From: Podarcis filfolensis
Lineage: Eukaryota
Assembly: GCA_964270895.1 (NCBI GenBank)
Contig: OZ185435.1
Direction: 5' to 3' (one strand)
Length of the DNA: 64,000 nt
Numbering within the stretch: the stretch's first letter is position 1; every line of letters begins with the position of its first letter. The notes under the pieces are model-generated. The model made no database searches. It had not been told where the DNA came from and was given only the letters and a program-made list of their open reading frames with translations. The translations under genes were made by a program, and so were the position numbers. Shown here piece after piece: positions 20,045 through 45,602 of this stretch.

Positions 20045-21215
20045 TAAATTCTTAACCATTATGAATGATTAAGAAGCATTATGAATGTGCCAGCCAAAGT
20101 GTTTTTGTCAGCTTTTTTAAAGAAAACAATGGTTGCACATGGAGAGAGATGCAACTGGAAGTACCAGTGTATCTGTTCCTCGAAAACAAACTAAAGAAAA
20201 TCCTCACAACACTAAATAGGTTCACAGAATCTATGCTTAAAGTATGGAAGGAGAAAGCAGGTAAAGTGCCCCCAACCCCATTAACCCCCTTGCCCACCAC
20301 CCACTATTCCACCAAGCAACCCACAGCATCCAAACAAAAACATGGCAAGTCAAAGGTTTACACAGCCTAACAGACTTCTACAAAAATGACAAACCCATAC
20401 TAACACAAAAAATAAAAGACAAACTAGGGAAAACTAGGTGTCCCCTAGTTTGTATACCCTGGCTGACCCAACACCAACTGCACACCTTCTTAAATAACCC
20501 AGCAGTCAAAGGACTCTGAACACCTTCGATAAACTTCTAACAGAGGGACACAGCAAGGGGATGGAATCCACAATATACAAACTACTACTAAAACCCTACA
20601 AAACTGTGTTCAAAACTCTGTTTAAACTATGGTCTAAACCATCCTTTAAGTCCATCTCAACCAAAAGAAGAGAACTGACTTTGAAACTAATTTATAGATG
20701 GTACCTAACACCTCGGGATGCGGGTGGCACTGTGGGTTAAACCACAGAGCCTAGGGCTTGCTGATCAGAAGGTCGGCAGTTCGAATCCCCGTGACGGGGT
20801 GAACTCCCGCTGCTCGGTCCCTGCTCCTGCCAACCTAGCAGTTCGAAAGCATGAAGTGCAACTAGATAAAAATCTTCTCTGGCGGGAAGGTAAACGGCGT
20901 TTCTGTGCACTGCTCTGATTCGCCAGAAGTGGCTTAGTCATGCTGGCTACATGACCTGGAAGCTGTACGCTGGCTCCCTCGGCCAATAAAGCGAGATGAG
21001 CGCCGCAACCCCAGAGTCGTCCGCGACTGGACCTAATGGTCAGGGGTCCCTTTACCTCTACCTTTAACACCTTGGAAGCTGGTGCTGATACACCCAGGAA
21101 GCTCACCTAAATGCTGGAGAGGCTGCACCACTACAGGCACATACCTCTGAAAACACAGACGTTGTATGTACCCTTGTTAACCATTAAAATCCTTTAATAA
21201 AAACAATTTTTAAAA
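20045..21215 (+). mobile_element. L1/Tx1-clade LINE ORF2 C-terminal relic, interrupted by a Sauria SINE
   Basis: Removing the SINE and one TSD copy restores LTLKLIYRWYLTP|WKLVLIHPGSSPKCWRGCTTTGTYL, resembling the Cys-rich C-terminal (zf-RVT-like) region of L1-clade ORF2. A-rich sense strand, ending near ttaataaaaacaattttt. Confidence 0.7.
20714..21064 (+). mobile_element. Sauria SINE (Squam1-type), full length
   Basis: tRNA-like head (tggcactgtgg A box, gttcgaatcc B box), body shared with three other copies, (tttacc)n-type tail, 8-bp TSD taacacct at 20706-20713 and 21065-21072. Confidence 0.92.
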
Positions 21216-24482: not shown

Positions 24483-24709
24483 CAGTGGTACCTCGGGTTA
24501 CATACGCTCCAGGTTACATACACTTCAGTTACAGACTCTGCTAACCCAGAAATAGTACCTCGGGTTAAGAACTTTGCTTCAGGATGAGAACAGAGATCGT
24601 GTGGCAGCGGGAGGCCCCATTAGCTAAAGCGGTGCTTCAGGTTAAGAACAGTTTCAGGTTAAGAACGGACCTCCGAAACAAATTGCGTATGTAACCAGAG
24701 GTACCACTG
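24483..24709 (+). mobile_element. Tc1/mariner (Tigger/pogo-like) MITE, copy 1
   Basis: TIRs cagtggtacctc(g/t)ggttacatacgc at both ends, TA TSD at 24481-82 and 24710-11. Strand is arbitrary. Confidence 0.9.
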
Positions 24710-25939: not shown

Positions 25940-26301
25940 GGGACGCGGGTGGCGCTGTGGTCTAAACCACAGAGCCTAGGGCTTGCCAATCAGAAGGTCG
26001 GCGGTTTGAATCCCCACAATGAGGGGATGAGCTCCCATTGCTCGGTCCCTGCTCCTGCCAACCTAGCAGTTCAAAAGCATTTCAAAGTGCAAGTAGATAA
26101 ATAGGTACCTCTCCAGCGGGAAGGTAAATGGCGTTTCCGTGTGCTGCTCTGGTTTGCCAGAAGCGGCTTAGTCATGCTGGCCACATGACCCGGAAGCTGT
26201 CTGCGGACAAACGCCAGCTCCCTCGGCCTATAGAGCGAGATGAGCGCGCAACCCCAGAGTCGTCTGTGACTGGACCTTACGGTCAGAGGTCCCTTTACCT
26301 T
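25940..26301 (+). mobile_element. Sauria SINE, full length
   Basis: Starts gggacgcgggtggcgctgtgg, ends ccctttacctt; 12-bp TSD tactgtaccttt at 25928-25939 and 26302-26313. Confidence 0.92.
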
Positions 26302-26879
26302 TACTGTACCTTTACTAACCACTTAATAACTTGCCACAACCATATCTACAACAATTGCCCTAAAACGTCACAGCATTTCCCCCCCAGTATCATATTAGGG
26401 AAGGCTGAGGGAAGGGTTCCCTCACCCCCTTTTATTTCAATAAATCATAAAGCAACAAACAGTCTCATTAAATCCCCCACTAGAAGCACCCTGCATGGAA
26501 GGGCAAGGGGGGGGCAAAGGGCACCCTTCTTTTCCACAACTACCAAGAGGCCTTGCACTCAGAAATGCAGTTTTTAGTGGTAGGCCTAAAATCCTAAATA
26601 TACATCCCTTCCCAAAGCTCATTATGCGAGAGCACTTCCTTCTCCAAATCCTCCCCAATACGCCTTTTGCCAAAACCCTAGAGGGGGGTATGCGAATCAC
26701 AAACACACACCCAGCTACATTAGCTCAGGTATTTAAGGGCAGAGTCACTCCCTCTCCCCCCCCCCGCCTTGCCCTCTGGCACAGTTACAGTGCCTTGAAT
26801 TGCTGCATGGCGGGCAAAACATCCAACAGCTGCAGCGTTTCCCTCCCACCCCTAGAGAGAAAACTTCCCCTGGTGAACT

Positions 26880-38966: not shown

Positions 38967-39202
38967 GCCAACCTAGCAGTTCAAAAGCACGTCAAAGTGC
39001 AAGTAGATAAATAGGTACCACTCCGGCAGAAAGGTAAACGGCGTTTCCGTGCGCTGCTCTGATTCGCCAGAAGCGGCTTAGTCATGCTCGCCACATGACC
39101 CGGAAGCTGTACGCCGGCTCCCTCGGCCAATAAAGCGAGATGAGCATTGCAACCCCAGAGTCAGTCACGACTGGACTTAATGGTCAGCGGTCCCTTTACC
39201 TT
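38967..39202 (+). mobile_element. Sauria SINE, 5'-truncated
   Basis: Body from gccaacctagcag to ccctttacctt; 11-bp TSD with one mismatch, tacaccaaagc (38958-68) / tacaccgaagc (39203-13). Confidence 0.9.
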
Positions 39203-40937
39203 TACACCGAAGCATCTAGGCTCTGCTAGCTAGATTTGATGAGTCACAATGGGCAGGGATTGAGAGGGCATATAGTCAGTCATAGGTATGCTTGCAGCAT
39301 TGGGGGTTATCACATGTGGACTAGAAAACAGAGAAGGTGCCCCTTATTGGCAGGAAATCTTCCAAAGCCCTTGGCTGCTACTATATGGTGTTTCAGCCAA
39401 TCAAGTGTGACTCTATGAACTGGGCAAAGGCAGAATAAATTTCTTTCTAATAAGGCACAGGAGTTGTAGCTACAAGCCATTTCTTGGTGTGAAATTTCTA
39501 CCTACAGCCAGGTATGGTTATTATTTATATAACATCATCAGAGTGCACAGTACTGTACACAGTACTGGCGCTAGCGAAAGGTCCCTGCTCACAAGGAGCT
39601 TACAATTCAGGCAGTGAGAAAAATGCAGAGGCAGGGGGAATAGAAGGTGAGTGAGTTGTGTTACACATATTTAAAGTGTGCTGAAGTGGGTTTTGAGGAG
39701 GGATTTGATGGATGAGAGAGAGCGAAGTAGAAATATGTTCTTGAGTTCCATTATGAGTGAGCACATAAAGAGAAGAAGCAGAGAGGGCACACAGAAAATT
39801 CTGAGGTATATCCAATACATATGACATTGAACTAGAATTGTGTGGATAAATTAAGCTTTACTGTAATAGGCATTCGAGTGAGAGCCCCAACTTCATTAAC
39901 ATGTGCAATTCTGCATGATGATCTGATTAGCTATTACAGATCATTTAGCAGCAAATGTATAAAGGCACCACATCCCACATACCAAATATGTACACAGTTA
40001 AATTGAAGAAAAGCAAGAGAAAGTGTAATGATAGTCTGGTTTATTTGCAAACAGAGGTCTATAATCCCAAGCAACAGAGGGTAATTTATTTCCATCTGTG
40101 ACATCTCTGAACAGTTTCTGATAGACAGGCTGAATCCCTCTAATGATAGAGCTGATCTGTAGGTTCTAGTATTTTGGGCCTCTTAGTGCATCACAAAATT
40201 AGAACACCCAAAATTTCAATATTCACTGACAGAGGTAGAATTTTCAAGAGAAACATGTAGTTAGTTCCCTGCCCTATATTTTGCTCATAACACAAATGCA
40301 GAGAACACTTGTAGAGGAGAAACACATAGTCCATCTCCTGCCTACCAATTCTCCCATGCAAATACTTTCCCACAGTTGTTTTTAAAGCTTTCCCCTCCAC
40401 ACCCTAGCTCTGAATTAATAATTCAAATTGTGAATTTACCTTGTTTGTGGAGCAAATGTTTTCAGCGGAGAATAAGTGGGCATGGAGAAGGGTTTTCCTT
40501 CCAATTTCCAAATTACCTCAGCAGACGCAGATCTCAAAACACACCCTTGGCGTGATACCATGTAGCTCAGCCCTTTGCAGTGGGCAGTCATGAATGAGCA
40601 GCAACTGCCATTGAGAAATCTTTTATATGTGATTAAATTATTCCAGCTCAAATGATCAGGGATAATTTTATCCCATGTAAATTCAGTAAGCACATTATGG
40701 AACGTTGTTTATTTAGTGGTTTACCCTCATGTGATCAATGTGATCTAGTAGCCAGAGTGCTGGACCTTGACCCCAGAGAGTAACATTAAAATATTTGTCC
40801 AGGCAAGAAGCTCATCATATGATGCTGGATCAGTCCATCTTCATCAGTCTAATTTACCTGATATGGTTCTTGGTAGTCTATGCTGAAAGAAGCAAAGTAT
40901 GGATACATGGGTTATGTAACTCTACCCCTGTGAAATA

Positions 40938-41179
40938 CAGTGGTACCTCGGGTTAAGTACTTAATATGTTCCGGAGGTCCGTTCTTAACCTGAAACTGTT
41001 CTTAACCTGAAGCACCACTTTAGCTAATGGGGCCTACTGCTGCCGCCGCACCGCCGGAGCATGATTTCTGTTCTTATCCTGAAGCAAAGTTCTTAACCTG
41101 AAGCACTATTTCTGGGTTAGCGGAGTCTGTAACCTGAAGCGTATGTAACCTGAAACGTATGTAACCTGAGGTACCACTG
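40938..41179 (-). mobile_element. Tigger-like MITE, copy 2
   Basis: TIRs cagtggtacctc...gaggtaccactg, TA at 40936-37 and 41180-81; opposite orientation to copies 1 and 3. Confidence 0.9.
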
Positions 41180-43538
41180 TAATGCCTATGTATGCCACTA
41201 CCTGGTGGAAGAGGAGCCAGCATTATACTGTAGTAGCCAATTTTCTCATAGCTTGGATATTATTTATCCCAGAACAAATATTTGAACATTTCATGTTCAC
41301 CCATGTTTGTGTTGTGGGAAAATACAGTTATGTAAGGTGGCAGCAAAACCCACAAGTGCCTCCCCCTTCTGGGTAGTAAAATAATAATATTAAAGTAAAT
41401 AACAATTGGCTGTCCTTTCATGACACCTAAAATCAACTGCTGCACCCTCATGATTGTAGGACTTGTTGTGGCCTATATAGCAGAAACAACCTTTTTTGGT
41501 ATGAGCTAATCTATTGGGATGTTTGATTACAGAAAACCTGCCCCAAGGTAGCTTGTCCTGGGCATCTACAAAATCCCTGCGCTTTTAAAACCCAACTTCT
41601 AAGAGAGAGTTAAAAGGCTTGCACGACTTAAAAATGTTTCAGAAACATTTACATAATGTCTCGGAGGTTGGTATAGATATTTTCTAGTTCCTTACATGTA
41701 TCTGTCCCTTGCATTATTAAAAGGCGACACACAATTATTACTCTATGTGCTACTGAAATGTAAAAACTCATATTGGCAAGTTTCTTATGTCATTTTAATA
41801 AATACGTGCACACATAATGGCTTCTTTCTCTTCCATTGATCTGGGTCTAAGGAATATTAAGATGAATGCCAGTAACCTACATATAGATAGTGAAATATAT
41901 ATTTCATGAAATTTTTTATTTGGAAATGCTACTAAGGTCCAATCCTGTAAAATCAGCCATGGTTTGGCAGAATACCTTGCATATCATACTGAGAAGAGAA
42001 AGCTATGCTGTCTTTACAGTTGTGCAAAACGATTAAGATGTTATCTATATAAATTAATGCATGGATGTACATGTGCATACATCTATGTATACCATATACT
42101 AGCTAAGGGCCCATCAATCATGAAGTGGTGGGTAAGGTCAGTCCTTTTCCTATGCTTATGCACCACTTCTAACTAAATCCTTTACTACTCCATTCCCACT
42201 CACTACTACCCCCTATTTTCTGAGCAGAGAAGCAGGTAAGGGGTTGTTGGTTGTGGGAATGAATTAAGAAAGCCAGCCTGCTTTTCTAGACCAGAGTCTA
42301 TTCTGACAAGTTCACCAGATGCTTAGGAGTGGCTTGTGGGGAAAATCAGATGCAGAGCAGACACTCTGCCTCAAATTGGGCAGGCCATCATGAAAAGAAC
42401 AAGGATTTTTACGCTACCTCAAAAGACTAATACATTTGTTACAGCAGAAGCTTTCCTGTATTGAAGTACCCATCATCAGTTGCATGGAGCGTTTTTCTCA
42501 GTTGGCAGGCATATAGGTGCAAAGAAAGAAAGGTCAGAGGGAAATTAAATGGGGAAAAAAATCAAAGTGTGACAATTATGTCAAAGCTTAGATGTATGTA
42601 CAGTGAACTCAATGTCCTTTCAAAGTGCACATTTTATTCTCTTGAACAAACACAGCCCCGGTATCCAGGCCAGATCTTTTGTTTTAAACTAGCCTGTGAA
42701 ATATAATAGTTGCCCTGATCTCTGCTTTTAAGAAATCAGCTCACCAACAGTGTTTACATTTGAAATAGGAAGGACTTTGGCTTTGATCAGCACAGGAAGA
42801 ACAAAAGTACAATTAGTCCTAAACTGAAGCTTCGATTGTAGCTTTTTCCCACCTCCACCAACCCCTCTTTTTGTCTACAATAAACAGACATCGTCTGTGG
42901 ATTCCAGTGCCATTGGCTGTGTCTATATTTGTATTAATTGCTGAGAACTGCAGACATTTATTAAAAAAAAAATAAGTTGGAACTTGCCAATGGTGACTTC
43001 ATCTCTTGGGATTGCTCCGAATCACAGGCTTTAGTGCATGTCTAGGACAATTGCTCACTGTGCTTTAGATAAGTAATTCTTTTCAACTGGTTACTCCACA
43101 ATGACATGAAAATTGTGGAATCCAATTTTCCCATTGGGATATTGTAATGGAGTCTATTGGCCTTGGAAGATCTCCCTTCCTTCCCCTGTTTCAGTTAACG
43201 TGCAAATATAATTTACCTCCTATTTATAGTTTCATGACCCATTTCATTCTCAGCCAAGATGTCTTTTGAGTGAGATGATTTTAAACGAGATGAACAATTA
43301 AACTCTAATGGCCTGCAAAAGCTTTAGGCACTACAAACCACTGTGCATCAACTTGAACTCCTTAGCTGTTTAATTAGGAAAGGCTAGGCCAAAATCCGAT
43401 GTGAAATCCACCAAGTTTGGGGTGGTGGAGGGGGGGGAACCTAAGTGAAGAGAGTTTGGCTTACAAAGTTTAATCTGCTCTACTCTTTATTAAAAACTTG
43501 GGAAGTAACTTTAAAAAGAAATTAAATGCAAATTAGTA

Positions 43539-43762
43539 CATTGGTACCTCGGGTTACATACCCTTCAGGTTACATACGCTTCAGGTTACAGACTCCGCTA
43601 ACCCAGAAATAGTACCTCAGGTTAAGAACTTTGCTTCAGGAAGAGAACAGAAATCGTGCTCCAGTGGTGCAGCAGCAGTGGGAGGCCCCATTAGCTAAAG
43701 TGGTGCTTCAGGTTAAGAACAGGTTAAGGAACGTATTAAGTACTTAACCCGAGGTACCACTG
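43539..43762 (+). mobile_element. Tigger-like MITE, copy 3
   Basis: TIRs cattggtacctcggg...cccgaggtaccactg, TA at 43537-38 and 43763-64; small internal deletion relative to copies 1 and 2. Confidence 0.9.
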
Positions 43763-45602
43763 TATTTCACAGGGGTAGAGTTACATAACCCATGTATCCA
43801 TACTTTGCTTCTTTCAGCATAGACTACCAAGAACCATATCAGGTAAATTAGACTGATGAAGATGGACTGATCCAGCATCATATGATGAGCTTCTTGCCTG
43901 GACTGTATTTGTATCCTTTCATATAAAACAATTTCCAGTGCTTGCTCCTTAAATACCTACCTACCTACCTACCTATCTATAATCTATCTATCTCCTGGTA
44001 CTTCCATCCGACTGCCTCTCAACACATGCCCAAGTTTTTCCTAAAGGGAACTTTTTTTTCTTCTTTAAAGGACTATGTGCCTTTTGTCTTCTGTCAGATT
44101 TGTAGGAAGCTTCCCCCCTAAACTGCCCAAAGAAATTCATTTTAAGGAGTATGTCTTCATGTATATGCAGAATATTTCCTACAAAAGTGTCATATTTGTT
44201 TCAAGGAAGGAAGGGACTACAATGAAACCACTGGGCTTCTTCAGTTTGATCCAGACCAACCATGAACAGAGTTGTGCTCATGCCCACATGCTGAAGGGGA
44301 GGAAGGTGAATTATGCAGATTCCTCCTGTTTGTAAACCCCCAGGAAAGCTGCTGTGGGTGACTGGGGGACCCTCCATGTGGGAGGTGACATGGGGACTCT
44401 TTTGGGAGTGCAGAATAGAAATTTAATAAAGAAACCAACAAATAAAAAACAGATAATACTGGGGGAAGTTACCTCCATCCCATTTGTGGTGGAGGCCTCC
44501 ACTGTATCTCAGTCATTTGTGCAAATGGAAGGAACCATTCCATTTGTAGGTGAACACATCTTGATTCAACCATAGTTATTTTCTGCCTTCCATTCTGGCA
44601 ATTGGCAAGGAGGATTAAATGCTCACTCAGCCAATGAAATGTTGACCAGCTGTCAGTCCTACTTTATGGCTCCTATGTGCCAATATCATCAAGCCACAAA
44701 GAGAAGGATTTGTTGCTGCTATACCACAGAAGTGGAACTCCCTTGAAACTTAAATACCACAAGTAGGGATCATTGAGCATTTTGTTCAGTCCCCATTTTA
44801 AATCAAACAATCCTAACAGCACTTCCCAAACTAATATATGGATCAGAACAGATTTATGTTTCAGCTTTCCCTGATTTTTGCATTGCAGTTCTCAGTTGGG
44901 AAAAGTACAAAAATACATTTTAAAATGTGCATTTTAGGTTAAAGGAGTTATTTTTGGATACATACTTTACATAAAATGCAGATTTTTCATGTGGTTTAAA
45001 AATGGAAATATTGTGTGGAAACATGTCTGAATGGACTTACGGACATAGGAATGAACACGTGTGAAACTGTCCCAGACTGGAAATAATGATCTGTCCATCT
45101 CTACTCACAACTACATCAGCCTAAGAACAACAGAAAGGAAAAATGAAGATAGTACTAAGTGGTAAGGACAGGTTCTATAGAGAAAAGAAGGGTGGGGGGA
45201 GAAACACCATTCATTTTCCAGACAGCTAATTGTCTGGCTAATAGGAAAGTTCATGCGGAGTCTAATAAAAGAACCTGTTTGGCATGGAACCATTGCTTAG
45301 ATTTATGTTATGGTTAACAAGCTTACTACCACACAAGGCAAATCACCCTATCATCATTCACTGATTACATAGCAGGGGCTCCAGCAGATTAATGAGTGCC
45401 AAATACATAGAAGCAATAATTGGGCCAGAGAAAAAGCAGGAAGTGCATTGAGAATGAAAAGCGGAGTGGGAACTCCTGTGAGGTCTCCTCCCACAGTCTC
45501 CCTCGGCAGCACAAAAGCACACTGTTTTGAGAGTTAGTGTTTCACTAACAGAGCGAAGGCCAGGAGAAAATCACATATGATTTAATAAGTCTGGCAAAGC
45601 AC

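What the first reader, a model, noticed from the sequence alone, without database searches (positions are those of the whole stretch)
40797..43910. Perfect 170-bp inverted duplication grafted onto two diverged MITEs, with a transposon-end footprint at the junction
Seen: 141 bp of unique flank (40797-40937) plus the first 29 bp of MITE copy 2 are the exact reverse complement of 43734-43903, while the remaining MITE bodies differ by many substitutions and indels. The copied flank is therefore much younger than the MITEs. At the right junction the copy is followed by ACTG-TA-TTT (43902-43910), which repeats the end of MITE 3, its TA and three flank bases (43759-43767). Established: Tc1/mariner transposases leave 2-3 nt of element end on the flank after cutting. 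Inference: a single-end cut or stalled fork at MITE 3 was repaired by invading the inverted MITE 2, copying past its end into unique DNA, then rejoining the original flank. Repeating this would let MITE pairs grow their own inverted repeats. The ~370-385 bp arms around a ~2.4 kb spacer could also support an inversion polymorphism or fold-back RNA.
Basis: partly seen in the sequence, partly recalled or inferred. Interest (0 to 1): 0.7.

Follow-up and report, generated by a model that had tools for sequence, protein, structure and literature searches.

The report
MITE flank copied onto inverted neighbour
In a wall-lizard genome, 141 bases of ordinary DNA next to one small transposon were recently copied, upside down, onto the end of a sister transposon 2.6 kb away; it is a real and tidy scar of DNA repair or replication of a kind already known, with no sign of a function.

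Summary
Window 40797-40966 is the exact reverse complement of 43734-43903 (170 bp). The rest of the two TA-flanked Tc1/mariner-type MITEs (40938-41179 and 43539-43762) differs by about 9% plus indels, no closer than either is to an unlinked copy.

- Two species (A, B) carry the duplication with the same two outer junctions, at about twice single-copy depth. It is therefore not an assembly artefact or a high-copy repeat.
- A more distant species (E) has both MITEs, but one unbroken single-copy contig runs through the left flank. The left copy is therefore ancestral and the right one a derived 143-bp insertion.

Best reading: a DNA 3' end in the outer terminus of MITE 3 paired with inverted MITE 2, copied out through its TA into 139 bp of flank, then rejoined the original flank 2-4 nt inside the MITE 3 end.

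That CTG-TA junction fits a Tc1/mariner single-end cut. A transposase-free replication template switch fits it about as well, and the two cannot be separated here.

Not tested: recurrent growth of inverted repeats, an inversion polymorphism, a fold-back RNA.

The scan noted a similar MITE-to-MITE patching event elsewhere in this genome (s1-328098).

New member of a known kind; modest interest.

The parts
40797..40935 (+). Donor: 139 bp of unique flank left of MITE 2 (the ancestral copy)
   Evidence: 100% identical to the reverse complement of 43765-43903, with no other copy in the window. In species E it lies inside one unbroken single-copy contig covering 40374-40963 (record 9).
40936..40937 (.). 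TA target-site duplication at the outer end of MITE 2
   Evidence: TA flanks both ends of MITE 1, 2 and 3.
40938..41179 (+). MITE 2, 242 bp, Tc1/mariner-type (pogo/Tigger-like termini). It supplied the homology for priming.
   Evidence: Terminal inverted repeats found. It is 85.5% identical to MITE 3 and 84.7% to MITE 1. Read depth is of the order of 10^4 times single copy.
41182..43536 (.). 2355-bp unique spacer between the inverted MITEs
   Evidence: No repeat in the window. Collinear contigs in species A, B and E. No Rfam hit.
43539..43762 (-). MITE 3, 224 bp, inverted relative to MITE 2; the recipient
   Evidence: Its inner end is present in species E (record 14), so it predates the duplication.
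43734..43762 (-). Outer 29 nt of MITE 3, identical to MITE 2; the homologous junction lies here or just inside
   Evidence: The perfect tract ends at arm position 170. This stretch shares variants with MITE 2 that differ from MITE 1. On its own it is only weakly significant (P = 0.06).
43763..43903 (-). Derived copy of the TA plus 139 bp of MITE 2's flank
   Evidence: 100% reverse complement of 40797-40937. In species A and B it is a collapsed 158-bp unitig with no differences, at depth 29.5 and 24.7 against 8-14 and 7-12 for unique DNA.
43902..43907 (+). Non-homologous junction: (AC)TG-TA. It holds 2-4 nt of the MITE 3 end plus its original TA, then the original right flank.
   Evidence: Read directly. 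The donor reads AAATA after GGAC, whereas the copy reads TGTAT. Contigs of species A and B start at 43874 and cross this junction (records 8 and 24).
24483..24709 (-). MITE 1, an unlinked copy of the same family used as a yardstick

Best explanation
This is a single, recent templated insertion of 143 bp. A DNA 3' end lying in the outer terminus of MITE 3 paired with the homologous terminus of MITE 2, which sits inverted 2.6 kb away on the same or the sister chromatid. It was extended along MITE 2's strand, out through the TA and 139 bp of MITE 2's unique flank. It then let go and was joined, with 0-2 nt of microhomology, to the original right-hand flank at a point 2-4 nt inside the MITE 3 end.

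Shown: the donor, the polarity, both junctions, and the relative age. Inferred: the initiating lesion. The most likely lesion, at roughly even odds, is a cut by a Tc1/mariner-type transposase at the outer end of MITE 3 only. Such a cut leaves CTG-TA on the flank. Repair would then run by synthesis-dependent strand annealing from the wrong MITE, finished by end joining.

The product is a 367-385-bp inverted repeat around a 2.4-kb spacer. Nothing here indicates that it has a function.
For: - The outer 170 bp are perfect, against about 9% mismatches plus indels in the MITE bodies (Fisher p = 1e-4).
- MITE 2 to MITE 3 identity (85.5%) is the same as MITE 2 to unlinked MITE 1 (84.7%), so these are independent old insertions.
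- Species E has the ends of both MITEs but a single unbroken contig, at single-copy depth 13.7, through 40374-40963. The flank is therefore single-copy there and the left copy is ancestral.
- In species A and B the contigs break exactly at 40826 and 43874, a k-1 overlap with the repeat. They carry a 158-bp unitig at about 2.6 times single-copy depth, so both junctions are real.
- Age is consistent. Divergence from the window is A 0.58%, B 0.97%, E 1.36%. The chance of zero differences between the arms is 0.19 if the copy dates from the B split.
- After GGAC the copy reads TG-TA-TTTG where the donor reads AAATA, which is the MITE 3 end plus its TA.
- Tc1/mariner cleavage leaves 2-3-nt 3' overhangs, and the Sleeping Beauty footprint is C(A/T)GTA (PMC3878927).
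- Filler insertions within 3 bp of transposon ends are documented in rice (PMC5023962).
Against: - The ancestral right junction in species E was not displayed, and it could not be fetched another way. Polarity therefore rests on the left side and on copy number.
- The MITE family is old. Most reads are 90-95% alike, and no evidence was obtained that its transposase was active when the event happened.
- MITE 3 was not excised, so this is not a canonical footprint.
- A 2-nt microhomology (AC) explains the junction without any transposase.
- Raw reads of the window's own species were too thin (about 1x) to cross either junction.
- Unitig depth of about 2.6x does not strictly exclude a third copy.
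Confidence: 0.8

Rival explanations
1. The same templated copying happened, but without any transposase. A replication fork stalled at the inverted MITE pair, or a spontaneous break occurred there. The nascent strand then switched template. It could have folded back on its own newly made MITE 2, or moved to the other arm. It copied 141 bp of flank and switched back to the original template at a 2-nt microhomology (AC). This would be a 2.6-kb-scale version of quasi-palindrome correction, or of inverted-repeat-mediated template switching.
For: One junction lies in the inverted homology and the other has 2-nt microhomology. The MITE family looks old (read-likeness classes). MITE 3 is still in place. 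Inverted repeats are established fork obstacles and template-switch substrates (own knowledge: Ripley 1982; Carvalho et al. 2011; Mizuno et al. 2009).
Against: The return point falls within 2-4 nt of the exact MITE end. Transposase cleavage predicts this, but it is one of many possible positions for a free template switch. The switch distance of 2.6 kb is long for classical quasi-palindrome events.
Confidence: 0.35
2. The whole arm (flank plus MITE, about 385 bp) was duplicated in inverted orientation long ago. A recent gene-conversion tract then homogenised only the outer 170 bp.
For: The identity profile (perfect outside, about 91% inside) is what a partial conversion tract would give.
Against: Species E has both MITEs but only one copy of the flank. 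MITE 2 to MITE 3 divergence equals that to the unlinked MITE 1. The right arm ends in the MITE end plus TA signature, which the left arm lacks.
Confidence: 0.04
3. The 139-bp flank belongs to a larger repeat whose consensus includes the MITE. Alternatively, 40797-43903 is one long-TIR or foldback transposon.
For: Long inverted termini around a 2.4-kb body superficially resemble such elements.
Against: - About 23,000 reads in the window's species and hundreds of contigs in A, B and E leave the alignment exactly at the TA (40935/40936, 43764). Their continuations agree only at the random level, 0.32-0.36.
- The flank is single-copy in E and about two-copy in A and B.
- No target-site duplication brackets 40797-43903.
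- No transposase-like ORF or Pfam hit was found in the ORFs tested.
Confidence: 0.02
4. Assembly artefact: the second copy of the flank does not exist in the animal.
For: Raw Hi-C reads of the same species did not cross either junction at the roughly 1x depth sampled.
Against: Independent short-read contigs of two other species cross both outer junctions and show the flank at about twice single-copy depth (records 1, 7, 8, 17, 23, 24).
Confidence: 0.01

Closest known systems
Filler or templated insertions at DNA-transposon ends after transposase-induced breaks (rice Mariner/Harbinger excisions, PMC5023962; P-element gap repair copying non-homologous sequence from ectopic sites, Nassif et al. 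1994; Tc1 footprints, Plasterk 1991; the last two from memory and from the reference list seen)
   Same: A break within 3 nt of a transposon end. The repair copies a nearby identifiable template, primed by homology, and ends in end joining. A short piece of the element end plus the TA is retained on the flank.
   Different: The element was not excised, so only one end seems to have been opened. The template is another, inverted copy of the same MITE rather than the sister chromatid, so unique flank DNA was carried over and the inverted repeat grew longer.
Inverted-repeat-mediated template switching (quasi-palindrome correction, Ripley 1982; DUP-TRP/INV-DUP, Carvalho et al. 2011; from memory)
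   Same: Pre-existing imperfect inverted repeats. One junction lies inside the repeat homology and the second is at microhomology. The result is a longer, perfected inverted repeat.
   Different: The spacer is not triplicated or inverted. The scale (2.6 kb apart, 143 bp copied) falls between the two classical cases. The second junction coincides with a transposon end.
   Same: MITE-to-MITE ectopic repair drags neighbouring unique DNA along.
   Different: Here the captured DNA lies outside the element's termini, so it is not mobilisable cargo. It exists as one extra copy only.

Membership tests
Tc1/mariner-superfamily MITE (for the two elements) | TA target-site duplication on both sides | tested here: met
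   MITE 1, 2 and 3 are all flanked by TA on both sides.
Tc1/mariner-superfamily MITE (for the two elements) | Terminal inverted repeats beginning CAGT, small non-coding body, high copy number | tested here: met
   18-25-nt inverted termini. Length 224-242 bp. Depth about 5x10^4 against about 1 for unique DNA.
Tc1/mariner-superfamily MITE (for the two elements) | A cognate autonomous element with a DDE/D transposase and matching termini | not tested
   None is in the window, and no lizard genome collection was searchable.
Tc1/mariner excision footprint | 2-3 nt of the element end retained next to the TA on the donor flank | tested here: met
   The junction reads GGA-C-TG-TA. Between 2 and 4 nt of the end are retained, depending on how the AC overlap is assigned. 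Expected overhang taken from PMC3878927.
Tc1/mariner excision footprint | The element is gone from the site, with footprint halves from both ends | tested here: not met
   MITE 3 is still present at 43539-43762, so at most a single-end cut can be claimed.
Templated insertion by homology-primed ectopic repair (SDSA plus end joining) | An identifiable donor, homology at the priming junction, and little or no homology at the closing junction | tested here: met
   The donor is 40797-40937. Priming occurred within the shared MITE terminus. The closing junction has 0-2 nt of overlap.
Templated insertion by homology-primed ectopic repair (SDSA plus end joining) | An ancestral allele without the insert at the recipient site | tested here: inconclusive
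   Species E has only one copy of the flank. The contig across its right junction was not listed, and the ORF look-up found nothing.
Inverted-repeat template switching of the DUP-TRP/INV-DUP type | Inverted triplication or inversion of the segment between the repeats | tested here: not met
   The spacer is single-copy and collinear in species A, B and E.
Long-TIR or foldback transposon | Several genomic copies of the whole unit, each with a target-site duplication | tested here: not met
   The flank is single-copy in E and about two-copy in A and B. Continuations beyond the TA are random. No duplication brackets 40797-43903.

The most novel reading that the evidence does not exclude
Single-end cuts by a still-active pogo/Tigger-type transposase at MITE termini may be a recurrent source of such events in wall lizards. 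Each cut would be repaired from a neighbouring inverted MITE, so MITE pairs would progressively extend their own inverted repeats into unique DNA. That would create long hairpin loci, possible sources of small RNAs against the family, and the raw material for long-TIR or cargo-carrying elements. Two other notes in the same genome hint at recurrence but were not checked here: s1-328098, a MITE patched from a sister copy that dragged its flank along, and s1-318056, a hAT MITE flanked by an inverted host duplication.
Probability: 0.12. Interest if true: 0.6.

Novelty: new member of a known kind. Interest (0 to 1): 0.33.

Why it matters
This is a clean, datable natural example in a vertebrate. It shows how homology between dispersed MITE copies can misdirect repair or replication and carry unique DNA from one locus to another. 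In doing so it turned two diverged 240-bp repeats into a 370-385-bp inverted repeat with a perfect 170-bp core.

Such structures are fragile sites, substrates for inversion, and potential hairpin-RNA sources. With about 10^4 or more copies of this family, the process could matter genome-wide.

As a single locus with no sign of function it teaches little that is new. Its value is as a seed pattern for a genome-wide count that could tell transposase-initiated events from replication-initiated ones.

Tried and rejected
- Fetching the species E allele through ORFs. Six ORFs around 43744-44441 were looked up by exact sequence, and none is in the protein collection. The ancestral right junction therefore could not be read.
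- Reading the flank's copy number from raw-read depth. My bins included the TA and the MITE end, so spill-over from about 5x10^4-fold MITE depth swamped them. Contig depths and contig break points were used instead.
- Raw Hi-C reads of the same species. Only about 1x was sampled, and no read crossed either junction.
- Earlier notes searched by sequence: nothing found.
- Literature search for this MITE family in Podarcis: nothing specific.
- Pfam on eight of the window's long ORFs and Rfam on the whole window: no relevant hit, so no gene context was obtained.
- Rejected readings, with reasons given under the rival explanations: transposition of the whole arm, old duplication followed by partial conversion, composite or long-TIR element, and assembly artefact.
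- RNA evidence for a hairpin transcript.

Full report
**What is there**

Reading 40400-44300 and a repeat search show two inverted arms, 40797-41181 and 43537-43903.

A global alignment of the left arm with the reverse complement of the right arm gives:
- 170 perfect bases from the outer end;
- then one T/C difference at a CpG;
- then an 18-bp indel;
- then 18 mismatches in about 193 aligned columns. Thirteen of all 19 mismatches are transitions and eight lie in a CpG context.

The inner 224-242 bp of each arm is a small element with CAGTGGTACC-type inverted termini flanked by TA. The same element occurs at 24483-24709, and in part from 63870. The outer 139 bp plus the TA are not part of that element. 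They have no other match in the window. The arm pair is the only near-identical repeat in the 64 kb.

Chance does not explain it: Fisher p = 1e-4 for flank against MITE, and a 170-bp perfect run has probability 6e-8 at the MITE's divergence.

**Are the two MITEs independent?**

MITE 2 is 85.5% identical to MITE 3 and 84.7% identical to the unlinked MITE 1. The two bodies are thus as far apart as any two members of the family. They are not two halves of one young duplication.

The first 29 nt of MITE 3's outer end are identical to MITE 2. They share several states that differ from MITE 1. Identity over 29 nt alone is only weakly significant (P = 0.06). The homologous junction can therefore be placed only somewhere in the outer 35 nt or so of the MITE, next to the 18-bp indel.

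**Evidence from other genomes**

The one run search found this stretch in contig sets of seven coded species, plus one raw Hi-C run with the species label that appears to be the window's own. I laid 40374-44603 on that Hi-C run and on contigs of species A, B and E. Unique DNA differs from the window by 0.58% in A, 0.97% in B and 1.36% in E.

Species A and B:
- The left contig stops at 40826 and the right contig starts at 43874. Each is exactly a 30-nt overlap with the repeat.
- The repeat itself is a separate 158-nt unitig (43746-43903) with no differences from the window.
- That unitig has depth 29.5 in A and 24.7 in B, against 8-14 and 7-12 for the neighbouring unique contigs.
- This is the signature of a two-copy exact repeat with both outer junctions present, in independent short-read data. 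An assembly artefact and a high-copy family are both excluded.

Species E:
- One 1763-nt contig at single-copy depth (13.7) runs without a break from 40374 to 40963, through position 40797.
- Other contigs reach the inner ends of both MITEs (41159-41435 and 41410-43561).
- Species E therefore has both MITEs and one copy of the flank, the left one, in place.

The duplication is thus younger than the MITEs, and the right copy is the derived one. Zero differences between the arms fits an age near or after the B split (P = 0.19-0.37).

The contig that crosses the right junction in species E was not among the rows shown. An attempt to reach it through ORF look-ups failed. The predicted ancestral junction has therefore not been seen.

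**Is the flank part of the family?**

No. In the raw reads about 23,000 reads leave the alignment exactly at 40935/40936. In species A, B and E hundreds of contigs do so at 40935/40936 and 43764. Their continuations agree at only 0.32-0.36, which is random for AT-rich DNA (table 7). The family ends at the TA.

**The junctions**

The donor strand reads, after GGAC, AAATA. The copy reads TG-TA-TTTG. The recipient sequence thus resumes 2-4 nt inside the MITE 3 end (the AC overlap is ambiguous), followed by its own TA and flank.

The three T's shared by the two flanks are a coincidence and carry no weight. The net insert is 143 bp.

**Mechanism**

Shown:
- the donor;
- the polarity;
- a homologous junction inside the inverted MITEs;
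- a closing junction with 0-2 nt of overlap.

This defines a templated insertion. A 3' end in MITE 3's outer terminus paired with inverted MITE 2, was extended through the TA and 139 bp of flank, was released, and was joined back.

Inferred: what opened the DNA.
- Tc1/mariner transposases cut the non-transferred strand 2-3 nt inside the element and leave that overhang on the flank. The Sleeping Beauty footprint is C(A/T)GTA (PMC3878927). CTG-TA is exactly that.
- Fillers within 3 bp of transposon ends are documented after excisions in rice (PMC5023962).
- Against this, the family is old. Most reads are 90-95% alike. MITE 3 was not excised. A fork template switch that returned at the 2-nt microhomology AC gives the same sequence.

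I put about 45% on a transposase single-end cut and about 35% on a transposase-free template switch or spontaneous break. One locus cannot decide between them.

The co-converted 17-29 nt at the MITE end would fit trimming of a mismatched invading end. This rests on my own knowledge (Anand et al. 2017), not on a test here.

**What was not supported or not tested**

- Nothing in the window shows recurrence. The other MITE copies have ordinary flanks.
- An inversion polymorphism cannot be read from short contigs, because the arms are longer than the k-mer overlaps and the inner and outer junctions are unchanged by inversion.
- The arms would pair strongly as RNA (cofold -671 kcal/mol). That is trivial for such a repeat, and no expression data were obtained.
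- No Rfam family or Pfam-bearing ORF lies nearby.

**Earlier notes of the scan**

- s1-328098 describes a MITE in another part of this genome that was patched from a sister MITE 12 kb away, dragging 280 bp of flank along.
- s1-318056 describes a hAT MITE flanked by an inverted host duplication.

Both are leads for recurrence and were not checked here. The notes also identify the genome as a wall lizard.

**Verdict**

This is a real, derived, single-copy rearrangement of a known kind: homology-primed ectopic copying at a transposon end. It is unusually legible. Interest is modest.

Noticed in passing
window 43746 (equivalent to 40954/40955): In species A and B the collapsed two-copy unitig starts at 43746, which is MITE position 17. 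That is 12 nt short of the perfect tract in the window (43734). The two arms therefore probably differ at MITE position 18 in those species. This could be a later substitution, or a shorter original conversion tract that was extended in the window's lineage.
   Followed up: no
window 20715-21061, 25940-26304, 28586-28803, 38967-39205: A second interspersed repeat family of about 210-366 bp, at 84-92% identity, in both orientations. It was not classified.
   Followed up: no
window 26128-27234: Three overlapping ORFs of 144-209 aa on the + strand with no Pfam match. The first overlaps a copy of the repeat family above.
   Followed up: partly
window 41361-41501: A short stretch of the spacer with about ten-fold depth in contigs of all three related species, and about four-fold in raw reads. 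It looks like a low-copy repeat embedded in otherwise unique DNA.
   Followed up: no
window 43945-43993: A (TACC)n/(TATC)n microsatellite 40 bp to the right of the junction. Reads and species E contigs break there, which is part of why the species E junction was not recovered.
   Followed up: no
window 41128-41169 and 43552-43590: Each MITE carries 2.4-2.6 tandem copies of a 16-bp unit at its inner end. The unit repeats the inner half of the terminal inverted repeat, so these may be reiterated transposase-binding sites.
   Followed up: no
window 44202-44203: Species A and B each carry an 8-bp AAGG-type insertion relative to the window. This is a small tandem-repeat polymorphism.
   Followed up: no
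window 40813-40824 and 43876-43887: A perfect 12-bp palindrome (CATCATATGATG) lies inside the copied flank, 16 nt from where copying stopped.
   Followed up: no
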